DNA from: Eukaryota sp. TZLM1-RC
Taxonomy: Eukaryota; Protista; Metamonada: BaSk clade
Assembly (NCBI GenBank): GCA_040285825.1
Contig: JAUPSS010000008.1
Location: 1-64,000, forward strand
Reading direction: 5' to 3'
Length of the DNA: 64,000 bases
In this document: piece after piece, positions 6,401 through 11,614 of the stretch
Numbering within the stretch: the stretch's first letter is position 1
Layout: each line of letters starts with the position of its first letter
Position numbers and translations under genes: made by a program
The notes under the pieces: generated by a model
What the model saw: the letters and a program-made list of their open reading frames with translations, nothing else
Told to the model about the DNA's origin: nothing
Databases searched by the model: none

Positions 6401-8562
6401 GTTAACGAATTTTTTTAGAAGAACTTAAAGAACTTTCAATGTGAGATTGGCGAGATACTCTTAGTGGATAAGCCAGTCCAATACTACATTCGTCATCAAA
6501 CGATTTTTCAAAGCTCCAATAATGAATATTACCATCAATTGTACTAGCAGTAAGAACAGTGTCAGAACAATGAATGGAACCAGGGCAAATTGGGACTTGG
6601 TTGGGGGTGAAAAAAGACTTTACTATTGTAAAAACATTTCCATTTAGTTTTAGACAATGAATAGTTCCAGTCAGATTACCCAAACCAGTAATAAACATTT
6701 GATCTTTAATTGTGCTGAAATAGACATCACAAATTTGAAACTTATCAAAGTGTTTGATACCATCATTAGGTAGAGCCAAAGGTTCCAACTCATCAATTTT
6801 GGCATCAATTTCTTCCTTAGAATACCCTTCATTTGACAAATTGTGGCTCATATCTTCTATTAATTTTGAACGTTCAGCTTGTAAGTCTCGGCGTTTCTTG
6901 AGCAAATCACGTTGCTTGGGCGGTGGTAAACAAAATCCAGCTAACTCATTAGGTAAATGAACAATATCAAACTTAAGACTACCTTCCAACCCAGTTGTTG
7001 GGGAATAAATCCATCCCAAAAAAACTTTAATTAAAAAAATCAGCACCGACCGTGACCAGAAAACCATTCTTAATAGCAGCTAATTTCGGGGGCTCGGTGA
7101 TATTAATTGAAAAGGTGCTAAATGACACCATACAAACAGGTGTGAGTACATTATTAGGAATATCAAGGGAGTACTTCCACAAAACACCATCTTTCGATAC
7201 AGTGACGACATAGACATCACTGAGAGTGGAAGAGACATCAAAGTGATTGACACAAATGTCGGTAATAGCTGCTTTACAAGGCCTGAGTGCAGAAAATAAA
7301 ATGAATCCACCTAGAGAAGCGCCAACCAACCGAACAATACCATTAGTGGTCCCAATTAAAGCAAGATGTGGGATAGAAAAGTGTTCAGCAAATGAATAAA
7401 GACAAGACCCGTTACCATGAAATTGTTCAGAAAGGATGGTTGTAGGCTTACAGTAATCACGACAATCAAAAATGATGAGTTTCCCATCAAATCCATAACA
7501 AAGGACATGAGAGGAGTTTAACCAGCTTCCACCAATAATAGGACCTGAATAACAAACAAAAAGAGTTTCGTAATCAAATGGTAAATTGTTTTGTAACAAA
7601 ACCTTATGTACAGCACCGCTAGTATCAGTTACTAATAATGCCTTGTCAAGTAGTTCAAGTGAATGAATTCTTTGGTTGGAAATTTCTAAACTAGTTAATG
7701 GTGTAACAAAGACTTCCAGTCCAAATTCTGGATAAGCCTGGTCAATAAGATCAAAATCCCAAGCTTTTATGAACCCATCCTGACCTGCAGAGACCACAAC
7801 TGAAGGGGTTGAGTCTTCACCATAAATCAAACACAAAGACTCTACATTTCCCTCGTGACAATTACTTGAAGAATTTGGTTTAATGACAGCTTTAATTAGA
7901 GCTCCTTCCCAGAGAAAAAGATTACCAGATTCGGATCCACACAAAACTTTACCATCAGGGAATTGTACGAAACCATAAATATCAGAGAGTTCCACTGCAC
8001 CAAACCTTCCTAGTTTACCGTCGAGCTTGAGACCTGTGAAAGTTTTAGCCATTGACCAGAACTTGATGTGAACAATACCAGAAGTGACAAGATGGCGATC
8101 GTTAAGGGGAGAGAAAGCAATATTGAAAACATCTTGAGAAAATGCCTTAGATCTTAGCATAATGCACTCACTTTCCCAGTCCCAAACAGTAAGAGTATAG
8201 TCTGGAGATGAACCTACAGAGGCAATGTATTTGTCAGATTGAGAGAATGTTAGAGAAGAAAATCTGTTACTGGTACCTCCAGAAAGAGTCTTGAAAGGGG
8301 TAAGATCAGGGAGAGTATAAATAACAATATTAGGGTTGTCTCCACAATAGCCTACTGCTATGTACAGACTGTTCTTAGATAAAGCGATGCACCCAATTCC
8401 AGAGAAAGAGTTCTGAACGGTAACAAGAGTCCCAGTGGAGAAGTCACTGACATGCCAAGCGTTGCTAGAAACATATGCGATAGAAGAACAGTTCCCATTG
8501 AGAGGAAGTACATTACATCTTCTATATGTATCAAAGCCAAAGGTATAACGACGACAGAGCAT
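3430..8562 (-). CDS. CFAP44: Cilia- and flagella-associated protein 44 (WDR52), split by several frameshifts; 3' end approximate
   Basis: The N-terminal WD40 segment ASVGSSPDYTLTVWDW..RSKAFSQDVF..HIKFW.MAKTFTGLKLDGKLGRFG..PDGKVLCGSESGN matches CFAP44. Downstream ORF pieces give the coiled-coil region, an acidic tract with DDCPPNCD, and EIHLLRRK near the C-terminus. Confidence 0.88.
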
Positions 8563-8619
8563 AATATATCAACCTAAGCAAATGCAATTCCAGTTATAAA
8601 TCTCAACTAGAACACAATT

Positions 8620-10560
8620 ATGCATCTTGTTTGTTTCTTAGTATGTACCCTCTTTGTATTTGCGTCACTGGATCAATACAGTTCCAGTAACTCCTGGTCT
8701 TCTCTTGTTTCATATGATAACTTCCTTTGGTTTCCTCAACAGTTGGATCATTTTGATACTAATAATTCTGTTTTGTGGAATCAACGCTATTGTTATTACA
8801 CTTCATCTGGCTATACGGATGGAAAACCTATCCTTATCTCACTTCCGGAAGAACAACCTTTGAATGAAACTGCTTGTAAATATGGATATTTAGTCGACCT
8901 TGCCGATGAGCTTCAAGCTGTTCTCCTTGTTCCTGAGCACCGTTTTTATGGTGCATCAATTCCTTTAGGTAATCTCTCTGTAGAAACCATCCATCTAACT
9001 TCTAATAAGCAGTCGTTGTTAGACCTGGCCAATTTTGCACAATTCTTCAAAACAAGGTTTCCTGAAAGTGATGTATTGTTTGTTGGATCTTCAGTTTCCT
9101 TTGCGGTTCAGTTTAACTCACTCAATGCAATTGGAAGTTCAAAGGAAGATTCTGGTTCTTACTTTGGATACCAAGTCAGTCGTGACTGGCTGACTTTGCT
9201 TTTAGAAGGGGAATTTTTGGAAGAACCAAAACCTTTTTCTACTGCTTTACTAACTGATAGAGTCACTGATCTTGCCTTTTTTGAAAATGATTTGTCCTTA
9301 ACGAGGTCATTGATGATTGGGTTTGTTATTGTAGTGTTATCAAATATCATTGTAGTTTTTTTGTTCAGATTTTATTCTTCTGGATCAAAGACCTCTCATT
9401 CTAATATTAGTTTCAATGAAGATGACATCTTGGGTGAAGGAAGCTGTGGGACGGTGGTCTTTGCTGGTCAATTGAACGATGGTCGGTCTGTGGCAGTCAA
9501 ACGTATTTTGAGCACCTTTTATGACCTTGCTAAGATTGAAATTGATCATTTATTACAGGCCGATTCACACCCTAATATAGTGTCGTACTTTGGCTTTGTG
9601 AGTTCAAAGCAGTTTATTTACCTTGCCCTTGAACTTTGCAAGTCCAATTTGAAAAATTATTTAAAGTCAAACGAGGTAAATTTTGCTCAAAAAAAGAGTT
9701 TATTATTGAATGTGATTACTGGATTGAACCACCTTCATCAGCAAAACATTATTCACAGAGATTTGAAACCATCTAATGTTCTAATTGGCCAGGATAACAT
9801 GGCAAAACTTTCAGATATGGGCCTCTCAAGAAAACTTGATAAAGATCAGTCCCACTTAACTACTCAACAACTCGGAAGTGGAAGTCATGGATGGAGAGCT
9901 CCTGAGGTGGTTGATAACTTTGGTAGAAAGGGACGAATAACTACAGCTGTGGATGTGTTTTCATTTGGTTGTTTAGTTCATTATGTCCTTACTGGAGACC
10001 ATCCTTTTGGCTCCACGATTGAAAGAGAATATAATATATCAAAGGGATTAACCAAAATTTCTCCAAGAATTGATAAACTAGCCGACAGTCTAATAAGACA
10101 ATGTATAAGAACTCAACCAAACAGAAGACCTTTCACCAGTCACTTAATTGTACATCCCTTCTTTTGGGAACCATCAAAACTGTTATATTTTTTGGAGGAT
10201 GTTTCTGACCGAGTGGAAAGTGAGTTACCTACATCTCCTTTGGTCAGGTCTCTTGAACGTTGGTCTCATGAGGTTTTTGGTCCGTCTTGGAGGGATAGAT
10301 TGGATTCTTTGTTTATAAGGTCTTTGGGACCGTTTAGAAAATATGATTTTTCTTCATTAAGAGACTTGTTAAGAGTAATTCGTAATAAGAAGCATCATTA
10401 CAGAGATTTGCCTATTGATGTTCAACAATTAGTTGGAAGTCTCCCTGATGGTTACCTGAACTACTTTGTTGGTAAGTTTCCACCTTTAGTGCTTGTTTGT
10501 TATAATTTTGTTAGTGATGAGTTACAAAGGGAAAATGTTTTTCAAGCCTACTTTGAATGA
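8620..10560 (+). CDS. IRE1: IRE1-type Ser/Thr kinase-endoribonuclease (KEN) with an N-terminal peptidase S28-like luminal domain
   Basis: In order: signal peptide; S28 motifs QQLDHFD, QRY and EHRFYGAS.P; TM helix; kinase LGEGSCGTVVF, VAVKR, HRDLKPSN, SDMG and GWRAPE; KEN domain DVSDRVE and DLLRVIRNKKHHYRDLP. Confidence 0.92.
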   Translation: MHLVCFLVCTLFVFASLDQYSSSNSWSSLVSYDNFLWFPQQLDHFDTNNSVLWNQRYCYYTSSGYTDGKPILISLPEEQPLNETACKYGYLVDLADELQAVLLVPEHRFYGASIPLGNLSVETIHLTSNKQSLLDLANFAQFFKTRFPESDVLFVGSSVSFAVQFNSLNAIGSSKEDSGSYFGYQVSRDWLTLLLEGEFLEEPKPFSTALLTDRVTDLAFFENDLSLTRSLMIGFVIVVLSNIIVVFLFRFYSSGSKTSHSNISFNEDDILGEGSCGTVVFAGQLNDGRSVAVKRILSTFYDLAKIEIDHLLQADSHPNIVSYFGFVSSKQFIYLALELCKSNLKNYLKSNEVNFAQKKSLLLNVITGLNHLHQQNIIHRDLKPSNVLIGQDNMAKLSDMGLSRKLDKDQSHLTTQQLGSGSHGWRAPEVVDNFGRKGRITTAVDVFSFGCLVHYVLTGDHPFGSTIEREYNISKGLTKISPRIDKLADSLIRQCIRTQPNRRPFTSHLIVHPFFWEPSKLLYFLEDVSDRVESELPTSPLVRSLERWSHEVFGPSWRDRLDSLFIRSLGPFRKYDFSSLRDLLRVIRNKKHHYRDLPIDVQQLVGSLPDGYLNYFVGKFPPLVLVCYNFVSDELQRENVFQAYFE

Positions 10561-10628: not shown

Positions 10629-11591
10629 TTATTTTAAAACATAAACAAATTCTTCAACGTATTCGTGTTTGCAATCGCAAGAATTTTCACAAGAATATAT
10701 GAGTAAAGAGGTAAAATCTACATTGTCTGTGTTACCTAAATAAATAATTGATGGTAAAACTTGAAATTCAAATACCCTTTTGGAGCCACAATAGGAACAA
10801 TTAGGAACTGTTAAATTTGGTTGTGGACAAGGCCACAAAGGTTCACCATCAAAACAATATCGAATAATTTGTTTAGAGTTTCGGCTTATTCGGGCGGAAA
10901 ATTCAGCAAAAAGTGACAATGATTCATCTACTTTGGCGACATTTTCAAAATCTTTCATATCCTTTTCAGACAAAAACTTATCTTCTATGGTAACTTCTTC
11001 ATCACTATCAGGCTCATCTTCGCACTCTATCCAGTACTGCTTGAAACAAAAAGAAGAAGGAGATTGTTGAGTGAGTGATGGTTCATCAGTAAAAGTTGGG
11101 CATTCCTTTGAGTGACATTCTTGCCAATGTAAGACTTGGTGGTTCTTGCAACAATACCACACTGCCTTGCACGATGAGCACCTTAACGGAGCAAGGCAAC
11201 CACAAACAGAGCAAAGAGGAGGTAACTGGGAAAGAGGTTGATCAGTAGATATGGGAGGTGAATCTTTATAGAACGGATTATGTTTAGGTAATTGGGCTCT
11301 CAAAACCTTCACAGAAGTTGAGAGTCCCTGGCAAGCAGGTGTGTTACAAATAAAGAGGTAAAGAGTGCGGTGAAAAGCTGTAGAATGTTCATCATCGTCC
11401 AAAGGAACATAAAGCTGTAACAGAAATTTCATCTGCGAAGAACATGTGGAACAATTCAATGATAACGAACCAGGAATATTTTGAGGTACAAGAAAGCTGG
11501 GAAAACCACCAAACTTAGATGGGAAATGTTGTCGTTCAAAAAGATGTTGTTGGGAAGGTGGAAGGTTCTCAAGAACAGCAAGAGTGGTCAT
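10629..11591 (-). CDS. PDCD2: Programmed cell death protein 2 family (uS5 chaperone) with MYND zinc finger
   Basis: SKFGGFP, CxxC..FLLQLYVP..FHRTLYLFIC, MYND CSVCG..CSSCK..YCCKNHQ.LHW..HSKEC, and C-terminal QIIRY..PLW..CSYCG..RVFEFQ. Confidence 0.92.
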   Translation of the reverse strand: MTTLAVLENLPPSQQHLFERQHFPSKFGGFPSFLVPQNIPGSLSLNCSTCSSQMKFLLQLYVPLDDDEHSTAFHRTLYLFICNTPACQGLSTSVKVLRAQLPKHNPFYKDSPPISTDQPLSQLPPLCSVCGCLAPLRCSSCKAVWYCCKNHQVLHWQECHSKECPTFTDEPSLTQQSPSSFCFKQYWIECEDEPDSDEEVTIEDKFLSEKDMKDFENVAKVDESLSLFAEFSARISRNSKQIIRYCFDGEPLWPCPQPNLTVPNCSYCGSKRVFEFQVLPSIIYLGNTDNVDFTSLLIYSCENSCDCKHEYVEEFVYVLK

Positions 11592-11614
11592 TCTCACAAA
11601 TATTGTCTATAATA

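What the first reader, a model, noticed from the sequence alone, without database searches (positions are those of the whole stretch)
8620..10560. IRE1 with a peptidase-S28-like luminal sensor domain in place of the canonical one
Seen: one uninterrupted 646-aa ORF running signal peptide, S28 (PRCP/DPP7 family) N-terminal half, TM, IRE1 kinase, KEN RNase. The S28 part (QQLDHFD, QRY, EHRFYGASIP, QSLLDLANF) degenerates right at the nucleophile motif (FVGSS instead of GGSYGG), and the later Asp/His half is absent. Established: canonical IRE1 has an unrelated luminal dimerisation/sensor domain. Inference: a dead peptidase fold may have been recruited as a peptide- or ligand-sensing ectodomain for a kinase-RNase. 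That would be a rewired UPR sensor or a new receptor-RNase. I know no description of this architecture.
Basis: partly seen in the sequence, partly recalled or inferred. Interest (0 to 1): 0.85.

Follow-up and report, generated by a model that had tools for sequence, protein, structure and literature searches.

The report
IRE1 sensor with dead-peptidase luminal stub
The only IRE1 stress-sensor gene I could find in the soda-lake protist Skoliomonas litria has lost the usual sensing domain inside the ER and carries a truncated, catalytically dead copy of the cell's own S28 peptidase instead, a natural domain swap that could show what an IRE1 sensor domain really needs to do.

Summary
Window 8620-10560 (+) is one 646-aa ORF: signal peptide, S28 peptidase piece (Pfam E 2e-26), one TM helix, then an intact IRE1 kinase and KEN RNase. 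The genome is Skoliomonas litria TZLM1-RC (GCA_040285825.1).

New here:
- **Sister strains are canonical.** The IRE1 orthologues of GEM-RC and TZLM3-RCL keep a canonical IRE1 luminal domain. The swap therefore happened on the S. litria branch.
- **The stub is home-grown.** It is a fast-evolving paralogue of the organism's own S28 peptidase, which is still intact on another contig.
- **The stub is smaller than described.** It holds strands 1-5 of the hydrolase core, a 94-aa gap starting just after the nucleophile position, a ~40-aa cap remnant, then a ~30-aa tail before the TM helix. The Asp and His regions are gone.
- **It still looks selected.** The frame is open (P<0.005 under drift) and substitutions avoid family-conserved columns (P=0.006).
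- **The junctions are real.** Short-read contigs bridge both without a mismatch.
- **No other example found.** No second IRE1 and no other S28-KEN protein turned up.

My reading: a real, probably working IRE1 whose luminal part acts as a generic ER-targeting and self-association or chaperone-binding stub, not a peptidase-like ligand sensor. That mechanism is inferred, and expression is untested. This is a new variant of a known kind.

The parts
8563..8619 (.). 57-nt divergent intergenic spacer between the EML-like WD40 gene (minus strand) and the IRE1 gene; presumed shared promoter
8620..10560 (+). Whole chimeric IRE1 gene, 646 codons plus stop, single exon; annotated as one CDS in GCA_040285825.1
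8620..8682 (+). Predicted signal peptide (aa 1-21), inherited from the S28 parent
   Evidence: Hydropathy; alignment with the N-termini of skoliomonad S28
8692..9093 (+). S28 alpha/beta-hydrolase N-terminal segment (aa 25-158): strands 1-5 and their helices, ending at the nucleophile position; three N-glycosylation sequons; Cys58 and Cys86 shared with skoliomonad S28
9088..9216 (+). Remnant of the S28 SKS cap region (aa 157-199 = skoliomonad S28 profile 258-300), joined directly after a 94-aa in-frame gap (P0283 166-259)
9217..9306 (+). Tail before the membrane (aa 200-229); the join between S28-derived and IRE1-derived sequence lies here; no clear amphipathic helix. AlphaFold2 gives low confidence to the whole stretch aa 166-231, which also takes in most of the SKS remnant
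9307..9381 (+). Transmembrane helix (about aa 230-254); homology to the sister IRE1 P0011 starts here, at aa 232
9415..10164 (+). IRE1 protein kinase domain (aa 266-515) with VAVKR (291), HRDLKP (379) and SDMG (398)
10183..10554 (+). KEN / Ribonuc_2-5A endoribonuclease domain (aa 522-645) with FRKY (572) and RNKKHHY (588)

Best explanation
SHOWN: this is the IRE1 orthologue of Skoliomonas litria TZLM1-RC, and no second IRE1 turned up in its annotated proteome. Its cytosolic kinase-RNase module is complete and evolves at the same rate as in the sister strains. Its canonical luminal domain, still present in Skoliomonas sp. GEM-RC and TZLM3-RCL, has been replaced by the 5' part of a paralogue of the organism's own S28 peptidase. 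That part comprises the signal peptide, strands 1-5 of the hydrolase core, a 94-aa gap beginning right after the nucleophile position, and a short cap remnant. The catalytic Asp and His regions are missing, so it cannot be a peptidase. The remnant evolves several times faster than the intact S28 genes, yet it stays open and keeps family-conserved positions. INFERRED mechanism: the S28 leader puts the stub into the ER lumen and preserves the type I topology. The stub, an incomplete glycosylated half-fold with a poorly modelled stretch (aa ~166-231) leading to the membrane, serves as a generic luminal module. It may self-associate or be held by ER chaperones such as BiP, and it would release IRE1 for oligomerisation when chaperones are titrated away. 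The transmembrane helix could add sensing of membrane stress. Oligomerisation would then switch on the kinase and RNase as in any IRE1. I do not think the stub senses a ligand in a peptidase-like way.
For: Real gene: single ORF, one CDS in the NCBI record. Two Logan short-read contigs, 8992-9232 and 9204-9430, match with 0 differences and bridge the internal S28 gap (nt 9094) and the S28-to-TM join (nt 9217-9315). Orthology: the kinase-RNase is 56% and 52% identical to P0011 and P0012 and forms a clade with them (SH-aLRT 99). Its end branch is 0.73, against 0.64 and 0.80 for the sisters. It aligns end to end with human and mouse IRE1alpha at E 1e-89 with the catalytic motifs present. Swap on this branch: homology to the sisters begins only at the TM helix. 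The sisters' luminal parts are 37% identical to each other (E 6e-50). P0012's luminal part matches that of P0013, an IRE1 carrying the usual luminal Pfam families (PF13360, PF13570), at E 1e-8. A profile including them hits the human IRE1 luminal domain 2hz6 at E 2e-28. The rRNA tree places GEM-RC and TZLM3-RCL outside TZLM1-RC (PMC11603281). Origin of the stub: the best hit among 1.84 billion representatives is the GEM-RC S28 P0131 (E 7.5e-29). The same genome holds an intact 462-aa S28, P0283, on contig JAUPSS010000010.1. The stub groups with the three skoliomonad S28s at 100/98 support, with an end branch of 1.21 against 0.15-0.55. A clade of stub plus P0283 is not rejected (AU p 0.49). Constraint: at 65 columns where the three orthologues agree, the stub keeps 25 of 33 family-conserved residues but only 13 of 32 variable ones (Fisher P 0.006). 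Both lineage-specific Cys are kept. In a drift simulation, 190 codons stay stop-free in only 0.05-0.45% of runs. Sole copy: the IRE1-module search returned only P0011 and P0012 as close kin, although TZLM1-RC proteins are in that database. Plausibility from the literature (abstracts read): IRE1 without its sensor domain still responds to membrane or lipid cues (PMC5555659; PMC3172275; Arabidopsis deltaLD and IRE1C, PMC6788458). Disordered luminal regions drive IRE1alpha clustering (PMC11480506).
Against: No RNA data could be reached, so transcription, the 5' end and translation from the first ATG are untested. The selection signal may date partly from before the fusion, when the paralogue may still have been a whole enzyme. 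A half alpha/beta-hydrolase fold may not fold at all, and the high pLDDT for aa 37-157 is driven by an alignment of full-length S28 proteins. Several near-invariant S28 positions are changed (for example G to E in GGE, and G to S in GGS). The claim of a sole IRE1 rests on annotated proteins of 355-1130 aa only. No fusion orthologue exists for a dN/dS test. Chaperone binding, self-association and membrane sensing are all inference, and I found no clear amphipathic helix next to the TM helix.
Confidence: 0.55

Rival explanations
1. The dead S28 stub is a true new sensor domain. It would bind a peptide, glycan or other luminal ligand and gate the kinase-RNase, giving a rewired UPR sensor or a receptor-RNase.
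For: The stub is kept open and its substitutions avoid fold-critical positions. Its fast evolution (end branch 1.21) could reflect adaptation to a new role. Earlier notes from this scan report other kinases in this genome joined to enzyme-like domains (s1-643750, not checked by me).
Against: The elements that build the S28 substrate pocket in PRCP are missing: the SKS cap, the M/N helices and the C-terminal hydrolase part. Only about 120 residues are modelled as folded. There are no paralogues and no family expansion.
Confidence: 0.15
2. The S28 piece is a passenger. The working protein starts at Met232, the first residue of the TM helix, giving a sensor-less, membrane-anchored IRE1 like Arabidopsis IRE1C. 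The upstream 231 codons would be a leader or a recently captured relic.
For: Met232 sits exactly at the start of the TM helix, where homology to the sister IRE1 P0011 begins. Sensor-less IRE1 forms exist and work in plants (PMC6788458). The stub is truncated and partly degenerate.
Against: 231 in-frame codons without a stop after about 57% amino-acid divergence are very unlikely under drift (0.05-0.45%). Substitutions are non-random with respect to family conservation (P 0.006). The ATG at 8620 is the first after an in-frame stop and lies 57 nt from the divergent neighbour, which fits a normal promoter arrangement.
Confidence: 0.12
3. The gene is on its way out. The rearrangement destroyed luminal sensing, the UPR is being lost in this lineage, and the ORF has simply not decayed yet.
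For: Many parasitic metamonads lack a classical UPR (from memory, not tested here). The luminal part is heavily damaged, with a 94-aa gap and a truncation.
Against: The kinase-RNase branch length equals that of the sisters and every catalytic motif is intact. The stub has diverged far yet stays open, so the fusion is not young enough for decay to have had no time.
Confidence: 0.08
4. Assembly or annotation artefact: two separate genes (an S28 fragment and IRE1) were joined by misassembly.
For: The gene lies within 9 kb of a contig end. The only reads available come from what is probably the same culture as the assembly.
Against: Independent short-read unitigs cover 8992-9430 with no differences and bridge both junctions. 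The frame is continuous. The S28 piece is a diverged paralogue (43% identity to P0283), not a collapsed copy of the intact gene.
Confidence: 0.03

Closest known systems
Canonical IRE1 / ERN1 (yeast Ire1p, human IRE1alpha; luminal structures 2be1 and 2hz6)
   Same: Type I membrane topology. Kinase plus KEN RNase with all catalytic motifs. Clear orthology to the IRE1 of sister Skoliomonas strains.
   Different: The whole canonical luminal domain, which dimerises and binds BiP and unfolded proteins, is absent. An unrelated alpha/beta-hydrolase fragment of about 200 aa takes its place.
Arabidopsis IRE1C and engineered IRE1B deltaLD (Mishiba et al. 2019, PMC6788458)
   Same: IRE1 proteins without the unfolded-protein sensor domain that still have biological activity. 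They are a precedent for activation that bypasses the sensor.
   Different: IRE1C simply lacks a luminal domain and coexists with the canonical IRE1A and IRE1B. Here a foreign domain has been inserted and no canonical paralogue was found.
S28 peptidases (PRCP, DPP7, thymus-specific serine protease; Pfam PF05577)
   Same: The N-terminal ~130 aa are homologous, with QxLDHF, QRY and EHRFYGxS motifs, and are modelled as strands 1-5 of the fold. The top structural hits are 3n2z and 3jyh.
   Different: The nucleophile elbow, most of the SKS cap and the Asp and His parts are missing, and the piece is fused to a TM helix and IRE1. It is not an enzyme.
RNase L and other kinase-KEN proteins with different N-terminal modules
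   Same: They show that the kinase-KEN module can be driven by non-IRE1 sensor domains. RNase L uses ankyrin repeats. One search also lists zf-CCCH + kinase + KEN proteins (P0032, P0063, P0104).
   Different: Those are old, separate, soluble families. Here the swap is recent, lies within the IRE1 orthologue itself, and keeps the signal peptide and TM helix.
Laboratory IRE1 chimeras with the luminal domain replaced by a leucine-zipper dimeriser (Liu, Schroder and Kaufman 2000; recalled from memory, not read here)
   Same: They support the idea that any self-associating luminal module can activate the cytosolic part.
   Different: They are engineered and constitutively active. Whether the natural S28 stub self-associates is unknown.

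Membership tests
IRE1 / ERN1 | Ser/Thr kinase domain directly followed by a KEN (Ribonuc_2-5A) RNase domain | tested here: met
   Pfam E 5e-50 and 9e-42. End-to-end alignment with IRE1alpha structures at E 1e-89.
IRE1 / ERN1 | Catalytic motifs of the kinase (beta3 Lys, HRD, DFG-type Asp) and the RNase (Tyr, and Arg-Asn...His of RNKxxHY) | tested here: met
   VAVKR 291, HRDLKP 379, SDMG 398 (DMG is also present in the sister IRE1 P0011 and in P0013), FRKY 572, RNKKHHY 588. The assignment of residue roles comes from established knowledge.
IRE1 / ERN1 | Type I membrane protein: signal peptide, luminal part, single TM helix, cytosolic effector | tested here: met
   Only two hydrophobic segments, aa 1-21 and about 230-254. 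This is a prediction only.
IRE1 / ERN1 | Canonical luminal sensor domain (fold of 2hz6 and 2be1) | tested here: not met
   No such hit in Pfam or PDB for aa 1-231. No similarity to the sisters' luminal domains, which do belong to that fold family.
IRE1 / ERN1 | Orthology by phylogeny of the cytosolic module | tested here: met
   Clade with Skoliomonas GEM-RC and TZLM3-RCL IRE1, SH-aLRT 99, with similar branch lengths.
IRE1 / ERN1 | Stress-induced unconventional splicing or RIDD of mRNAs | not testable with these tools
   This needs experiments or RNA data from stressed cultures.
Peptidase S28 | Homology to the S28 alpha/beta-hydrolase core | tested here: met
   PF05577 at 93 bits. Skoliomonad S28 profile E 3e-41. 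Foldseek hit to 3n2z E 1e-8, covering only about 27% of the target.
Peptidase S28 | Complete Ser-Asp-His triad (PRCP Ser179, Asp430, His455) with a GxSxG elbow | tested here: not met
   GGSY is replaced by GSSV and followed by the 94-aa gap. The regions carrying Asp (P0283 395) and His (426) are absent.
Peptidase S28 | SKS helical cap over the active site | tested here: not met
   Only a remnant of about 40 aa is left (profile 258-300), and it is modelled as unstructured.

The most novel reading that the evidence does not exclude
The S28 stub is a working, newly evolved sensing ectodomain. Either it reads ER folding load through a mechanism unrelated to the canonical groove, for example as a permanently incomplete fold that acts as a built-in chaperone client. 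Or, because S28 enzymes are lysosomal, the protein has left the ER and works as a receptor-RNase in the food-vacuole or lysosomal membrane of this bacterivore. Either way it would be a natural proof that the IRE1 luminal domain is replaceable by an unrelated module.
Probability: 0.15. Interest if true: 0.85.

Novelty: new variant of a known kind. Interest (0 to 1): 0.6.

Why it matters
How IRE1 senses stress is a long-running dispute between direct binding of unfolded proteins, release of BiP, and membrane stress. The evidence so far comes from engineered deletions and chimeras in yeast, mammals and plants. Here evolution appears to have run the experiment itself. In one free-living, culturable protist the apparently only IRE1 has had its sensor replaced by an unrelated, broken enzyme fragment. 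Close relatives that still have the canonical sensor are also in culture. If the gene is expressed and stress-responsive, comparing these strains would show which luminal properties are truly needed. It is also a clean, datable case of a pseudo-enzyme born by gene fusion, because the parent gene is still present in the same genome.

Tried and rejected
1. Adjacent-gene deletion model: I asked whether an S28 gene sits next to IRE1 in the sister strains, so that a simple deletion could have fused them. It does not, and the three IRE1 loci share no synteny.
2. The 43-aa 'cluster mates' P0009 and P0010 of the window protein are unrelated sequences. This is a database glitch, which also hides the self-hit. 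Two look-ups were wasted.
3. tblastn of S28 proteins and of sister IRE1s against the whole 64-kb window found no other S28 piece and no relic of a canonical luminal domain.
4. A metagenome scan with aa 28-300 found nothing. The findings index has no other note on IRE1 in this genome.
5. Reads: only three runs from one sample were offered, none on record as RNA. Two small contigs cover 8992-9430 and the rest of the gene is uncovered. Expression is therefore untested.
6. MAFFT's global alignment suggested that aa 159-185 continue S28 contiguously with small deletions. I rejected this in favour of the profile-supported match to positions 258-300.
7. GTATGT at 8641 as a hidden intron: splicing to either nearby AG would break the frame, and the motif count in the window is at chance level.
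8. I looked for an amphipathic helix beside the TM helix, as in yeast Ire1, and found none convincing.
9. The placement of the stub inside the skoliomonad S28 clade is unresolved. The best tree puts it with P0131 and P0282, but a clade with P0283 is not rejected.
Full report
**What is there.** Window 8620-10560 (+) is a single uninterrupted ORF of 646 codons. It starts at the first ATG after an in-frame TAG and lies 57 nt from a divergently oriented EML-like WD40 gene. Pfam finds four things in order:
- Peptidase_S28 at aa 40-158, covering profile positions 1-121 of 434 (E 2e-26, 93 bits against a cut-off of 25).
- Pkinase at aa 266-515.
- Ribonuc_2-5A (KEN) at aa 522-645.
- Only two hydrophobic segments, aa 1-21 (signal peptide) and about aa 230-254 (TM helix).

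The N-terminal part matches human PRCP 3n2z at E 7e-13. The C-terminal 385 aa align end to end with human and mouse IRE1alpha at about E 1e-89. The motifs VAVKR, HRDLKP, SDMG, FRKY and RNKKHHY are all present.

**Whose genome.** The exact protein is encoded on JAUPSS010000008.1 of GCA_040285825.1, at contig positions equal to the window coordinates, and is annotated there as one CDS. A protein from another contig of the same assembly is named 'Eukaryota sp. TZLM1-RC'. That strain is Skoliomonas litria, a free-living anaerobic metamonad from soda lakes (PMC11603281; genome paper PMC11316075). Neither paper mentions IRE1. Notes from other agents of this scan also name the organism S. litria.

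**Is the join real?** Only three runs from one sample were offered, none recorded as RNA. Two Logan short-read contigs lie at 8992-9232 and 9204-9430 with no differences. The first bridges the internal S28 gap (nt 9094). The second bridges the S28-to-TM-to-kinase transition (nt 9217-9415). The reads probably come from the same culture as the assembly, but they are independent of the long-read assembler. The S28 piece is also a diverged paralogue, only 43% identical to the intact gene, so it cannot be a collapsed or mis-placed copy. I put misassembly at about 3%. Expression could not be tested.

**The sister strains keep the canonical sensor.** The closest relatives of the kinase-RNase module are P0011 (Skoliomonas sp. 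GEM-RC, 781 aa, 55-56% identity) and P0012 (TZLM3-RCL, 813 aa, 51-52%). Similarity to P0011 starts only at the TM helix (aa 232), and the luminal parts show nothing in common with this protein.

The two sisters' luminal parts (about 350 aa) are 37% identical to each other (E 6e-50). That of P0012 matches the luminal domain of P0013, an IRE1 carrying the usual luminal Pfam families, at E 1e-8 and gives a weak PF13570 hit. A profile that includes them finds the human IRE1alpha luminal domain 2hz6 at E 2e-28, and also the luminal domains of PERK and yeast Ire1.

The rRNA tree puts TZLM3-RCL deepest and GEM-RC as sister to TZLM1-RC plus Soap20-RC. The canonical domain was therefore lost and replaced on the branch leading to S. 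litria.

**No second IRE1 found.** The search with the IRE1 module returned no second close hit from TZLM1-RC, although that proteome is in the database. The caveats are that only annotated proteins of 355-1130 aa were searched.

**Where the stub came from.** An exhaustive phmmer search of aa 1-230 against 1.84 billion representatives gives as best hit a full-length S28 peptidase of GEM-RC (P0131, E 7.5e-29). Its orthologues are P0282 (TZLM3-RCL) and P0283. P0283 lies in the same genome as the window, on another contig, and is intact at 462 aa.
- In a tree of the N-terminal block, the stub groups with these three at 100/98 support.
- Its end branch is 1.21 substitutions per site, against 0.15-0.55 for the intact genes.
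- A sister relationship with P0283 is not rejected (AU p 0.49).

The stub is therefore a home-grown paralogue that has evolved two to eight times faster than the intact genes. There is no S28 gene next to IRE1 in the sisters and no synteny between the loci. A simple deletion between neighbouring genes is not supported.

**Exact anatomy of the stub.** A profile of the three skoliomonad S28s matches aa 25-159 to positions 32-166 (E 3e-41). It also matches aa 157-199 to positions 258-300 (E 6e-7 when aa 151-231 are searched alone).
- In P0283 numbering, residues 166-259 are missing in frame. The break comes immediately after the Ser that aligns with the nucleophile (GGSY becomes GSSV).
- Homology fades by P0283 position 300-315.
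- The Asp (DPW, 395) and His (HCAD, 426) regions are absent.

In PRCP the hydrolase domain is built from residues 46-204 and 405-491. [quoted passage not shown] The stub therefore keeps strands 1-5 with their helices and a scrap of the cap.

AlphaFold2, run with an S28 alignment, gives pLDDT above 90 for aa ~37-157 and below 50 for aa 166-231. Foldseek returns PRCP and DPP7 but covers only about 27% of them. This is a pseudo-enzyme fragment, not a peptidase.

**Is the stub maintained?** Three observations say yes, at least until recently.
- In a simulation of drift on codons 28-217 to the observed divergence, the frame stays stop-free in only 0.05-0.45% of runs, and indels were ignored.
- At the 65 columns where the three intact skoliomonad S28s agree, the stub keeps the residue at 25 of 33 family-conserved columns but only 13 of 32 variable ones (Fisher P 0.006).
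- Both Cys residues specific to skoliomonad S28 are kept, and three N-glycosylation sequons are present.

Against this, some near-invariant positions have changed, such as GGE to EE and GGS to GSS. Part of the signal could also predate the fusion. The kinase-RNase module shows no acceleration: its end branch is 0.73, against 0.64 and 0.80 in the sisters.

**How it probably works (inference).** The S28 leader delivers the N-terminus into the ER, and the IRE1 TM helix and cytosolic module are unchanged. The protein should therefore still be an ER-membrane kinase-RNase switched on by oligomerisation. The luminal part cannot use the canonical groove or the canonical BiP site, and it lacks what S28 enzymes use to hold substrates.

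I think the most likely role is generic. A half alpha/beta-hydrolase fold with a poorly modelled stretch leading to the membrane is the kind of object that ER chaperones hold and that self-associates when they are scarce. That would recreate a BiP-titration switch. The TM region could add the membrane-stress input that works without a luminal domain (PMC5555659, PMC3172275, PMC6788458). Disordered luminal segments are known to drive IRE1alpha clustering (PMC11480506). None of this is shown here.

Rivals are a true new ligand sensor (0.15), a passenger leader with translation from Met232 (0.12), a decaying gene (0.08) and an artefact (0.03).

**Comparison with what is known, and novelty.** Sensor-less IRE1 exists (Arabidopsis IRE1C, PMC6788458). 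Kinase-KEN modules with other N-terminal domains also exist: RNase L, and the zf-CCCH forms seen. I found no IRE1 with an S28 or other hydrolase-derived luminal domain:
- None among the 120 best IRE1 hits.
- None among the 150 best S28 hits, where every long one I scanned was S28-only, mostly tandem copies.
- None in the named Atlas clusters listed.
- None in JGI metagenome contigs.
- None in the paper library.

InterPro itself could not be queried. I file this as a new variant of a known kind: an IRE1 orthologue that fails the luminal-domain criterion of the family while meeting all the others.

**Side observation on origin.** The intact S28 gene P0283 has three 31-35-nt introns, after aa 83, 168 and 213. 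The fused copy has none, and its 94-aa gap starts three codons before the exon 2 / intron 2 border. This hints at a mis-spliced cDNA origin. However, intron positions differ even between sister strains, so the hint is weak.

**Rules.** No spliced model or joined sequence was used.

Noticed in passing
L012:8001-9487 (S. litria S28 gene P0283); L011:10001-11403 (GEM-RC orthologue): P0283 has three tiny introns (31, 35 and 32 nt, GTATGT...AG) after aa 83, 168 and 213. The GEM-RC orthologue has a single intron after aa 193. Intron positions are therefore not shared between sister strains. The S28 copy fused to IRE1 has none of them, and its 94-aa gap begins 3 codons before the exon 2 / intron 2 border, which may point to a mis-spliced cDNA origin.
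   Followed up: partly
window 8563-8619: Only 57 nt separate the start codons' sides of the divergent EML-like WD40 gene (7027-8562, minus strand) and the IRE1 gene. This looks like a very small bidirectional promoter.
   Followed up: no
proteins P0032, P0063, P0104 and P0016: Some metagenomic kinase-KEN proteins carry zf-CCCH domains (PF00642) alongside the kinase and KEN domains. A 431-aa 'IRE1 family protein' is filed under an archaeon MAG, which is probably eukaryotic DNA binned by mistake or something worth a look.
   Followed up: no
window 8620-10560 (database record): The protein collection places this 646-aa protein in a 90% cluster whose representative and other member are unrelated 43-aa proteins (P0009, P0010). 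As a result the protein does not appear as its own hit in homology searches.
   Followed up: yes
window 8550-10500: AT skew is clearly negative (T-rich coding strand) over the S28, linker and TM part up to about 9600, and near zero over most of the kinase. The two parts of the gene differ in composition.
   Followed up: no
window 10629-11597 (minus strand): The downstream neighbour is a PDCD2-like protein (zf-MYND + PDCD2_C). Its stop lies 68 nt from the IRE1 stop, so the two genes converge in a compact arrangement.
   Followed up: no
P0011 (GEM-RC IRE1), L001:10001-12346: The annotated N-terminus of the GEM-RC IRE1 has no obvious signal peptide, and its alignment with P0012 starts at P0012 residue 63. 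The 5' end of that gene model may be wrong.
   Followed up: no
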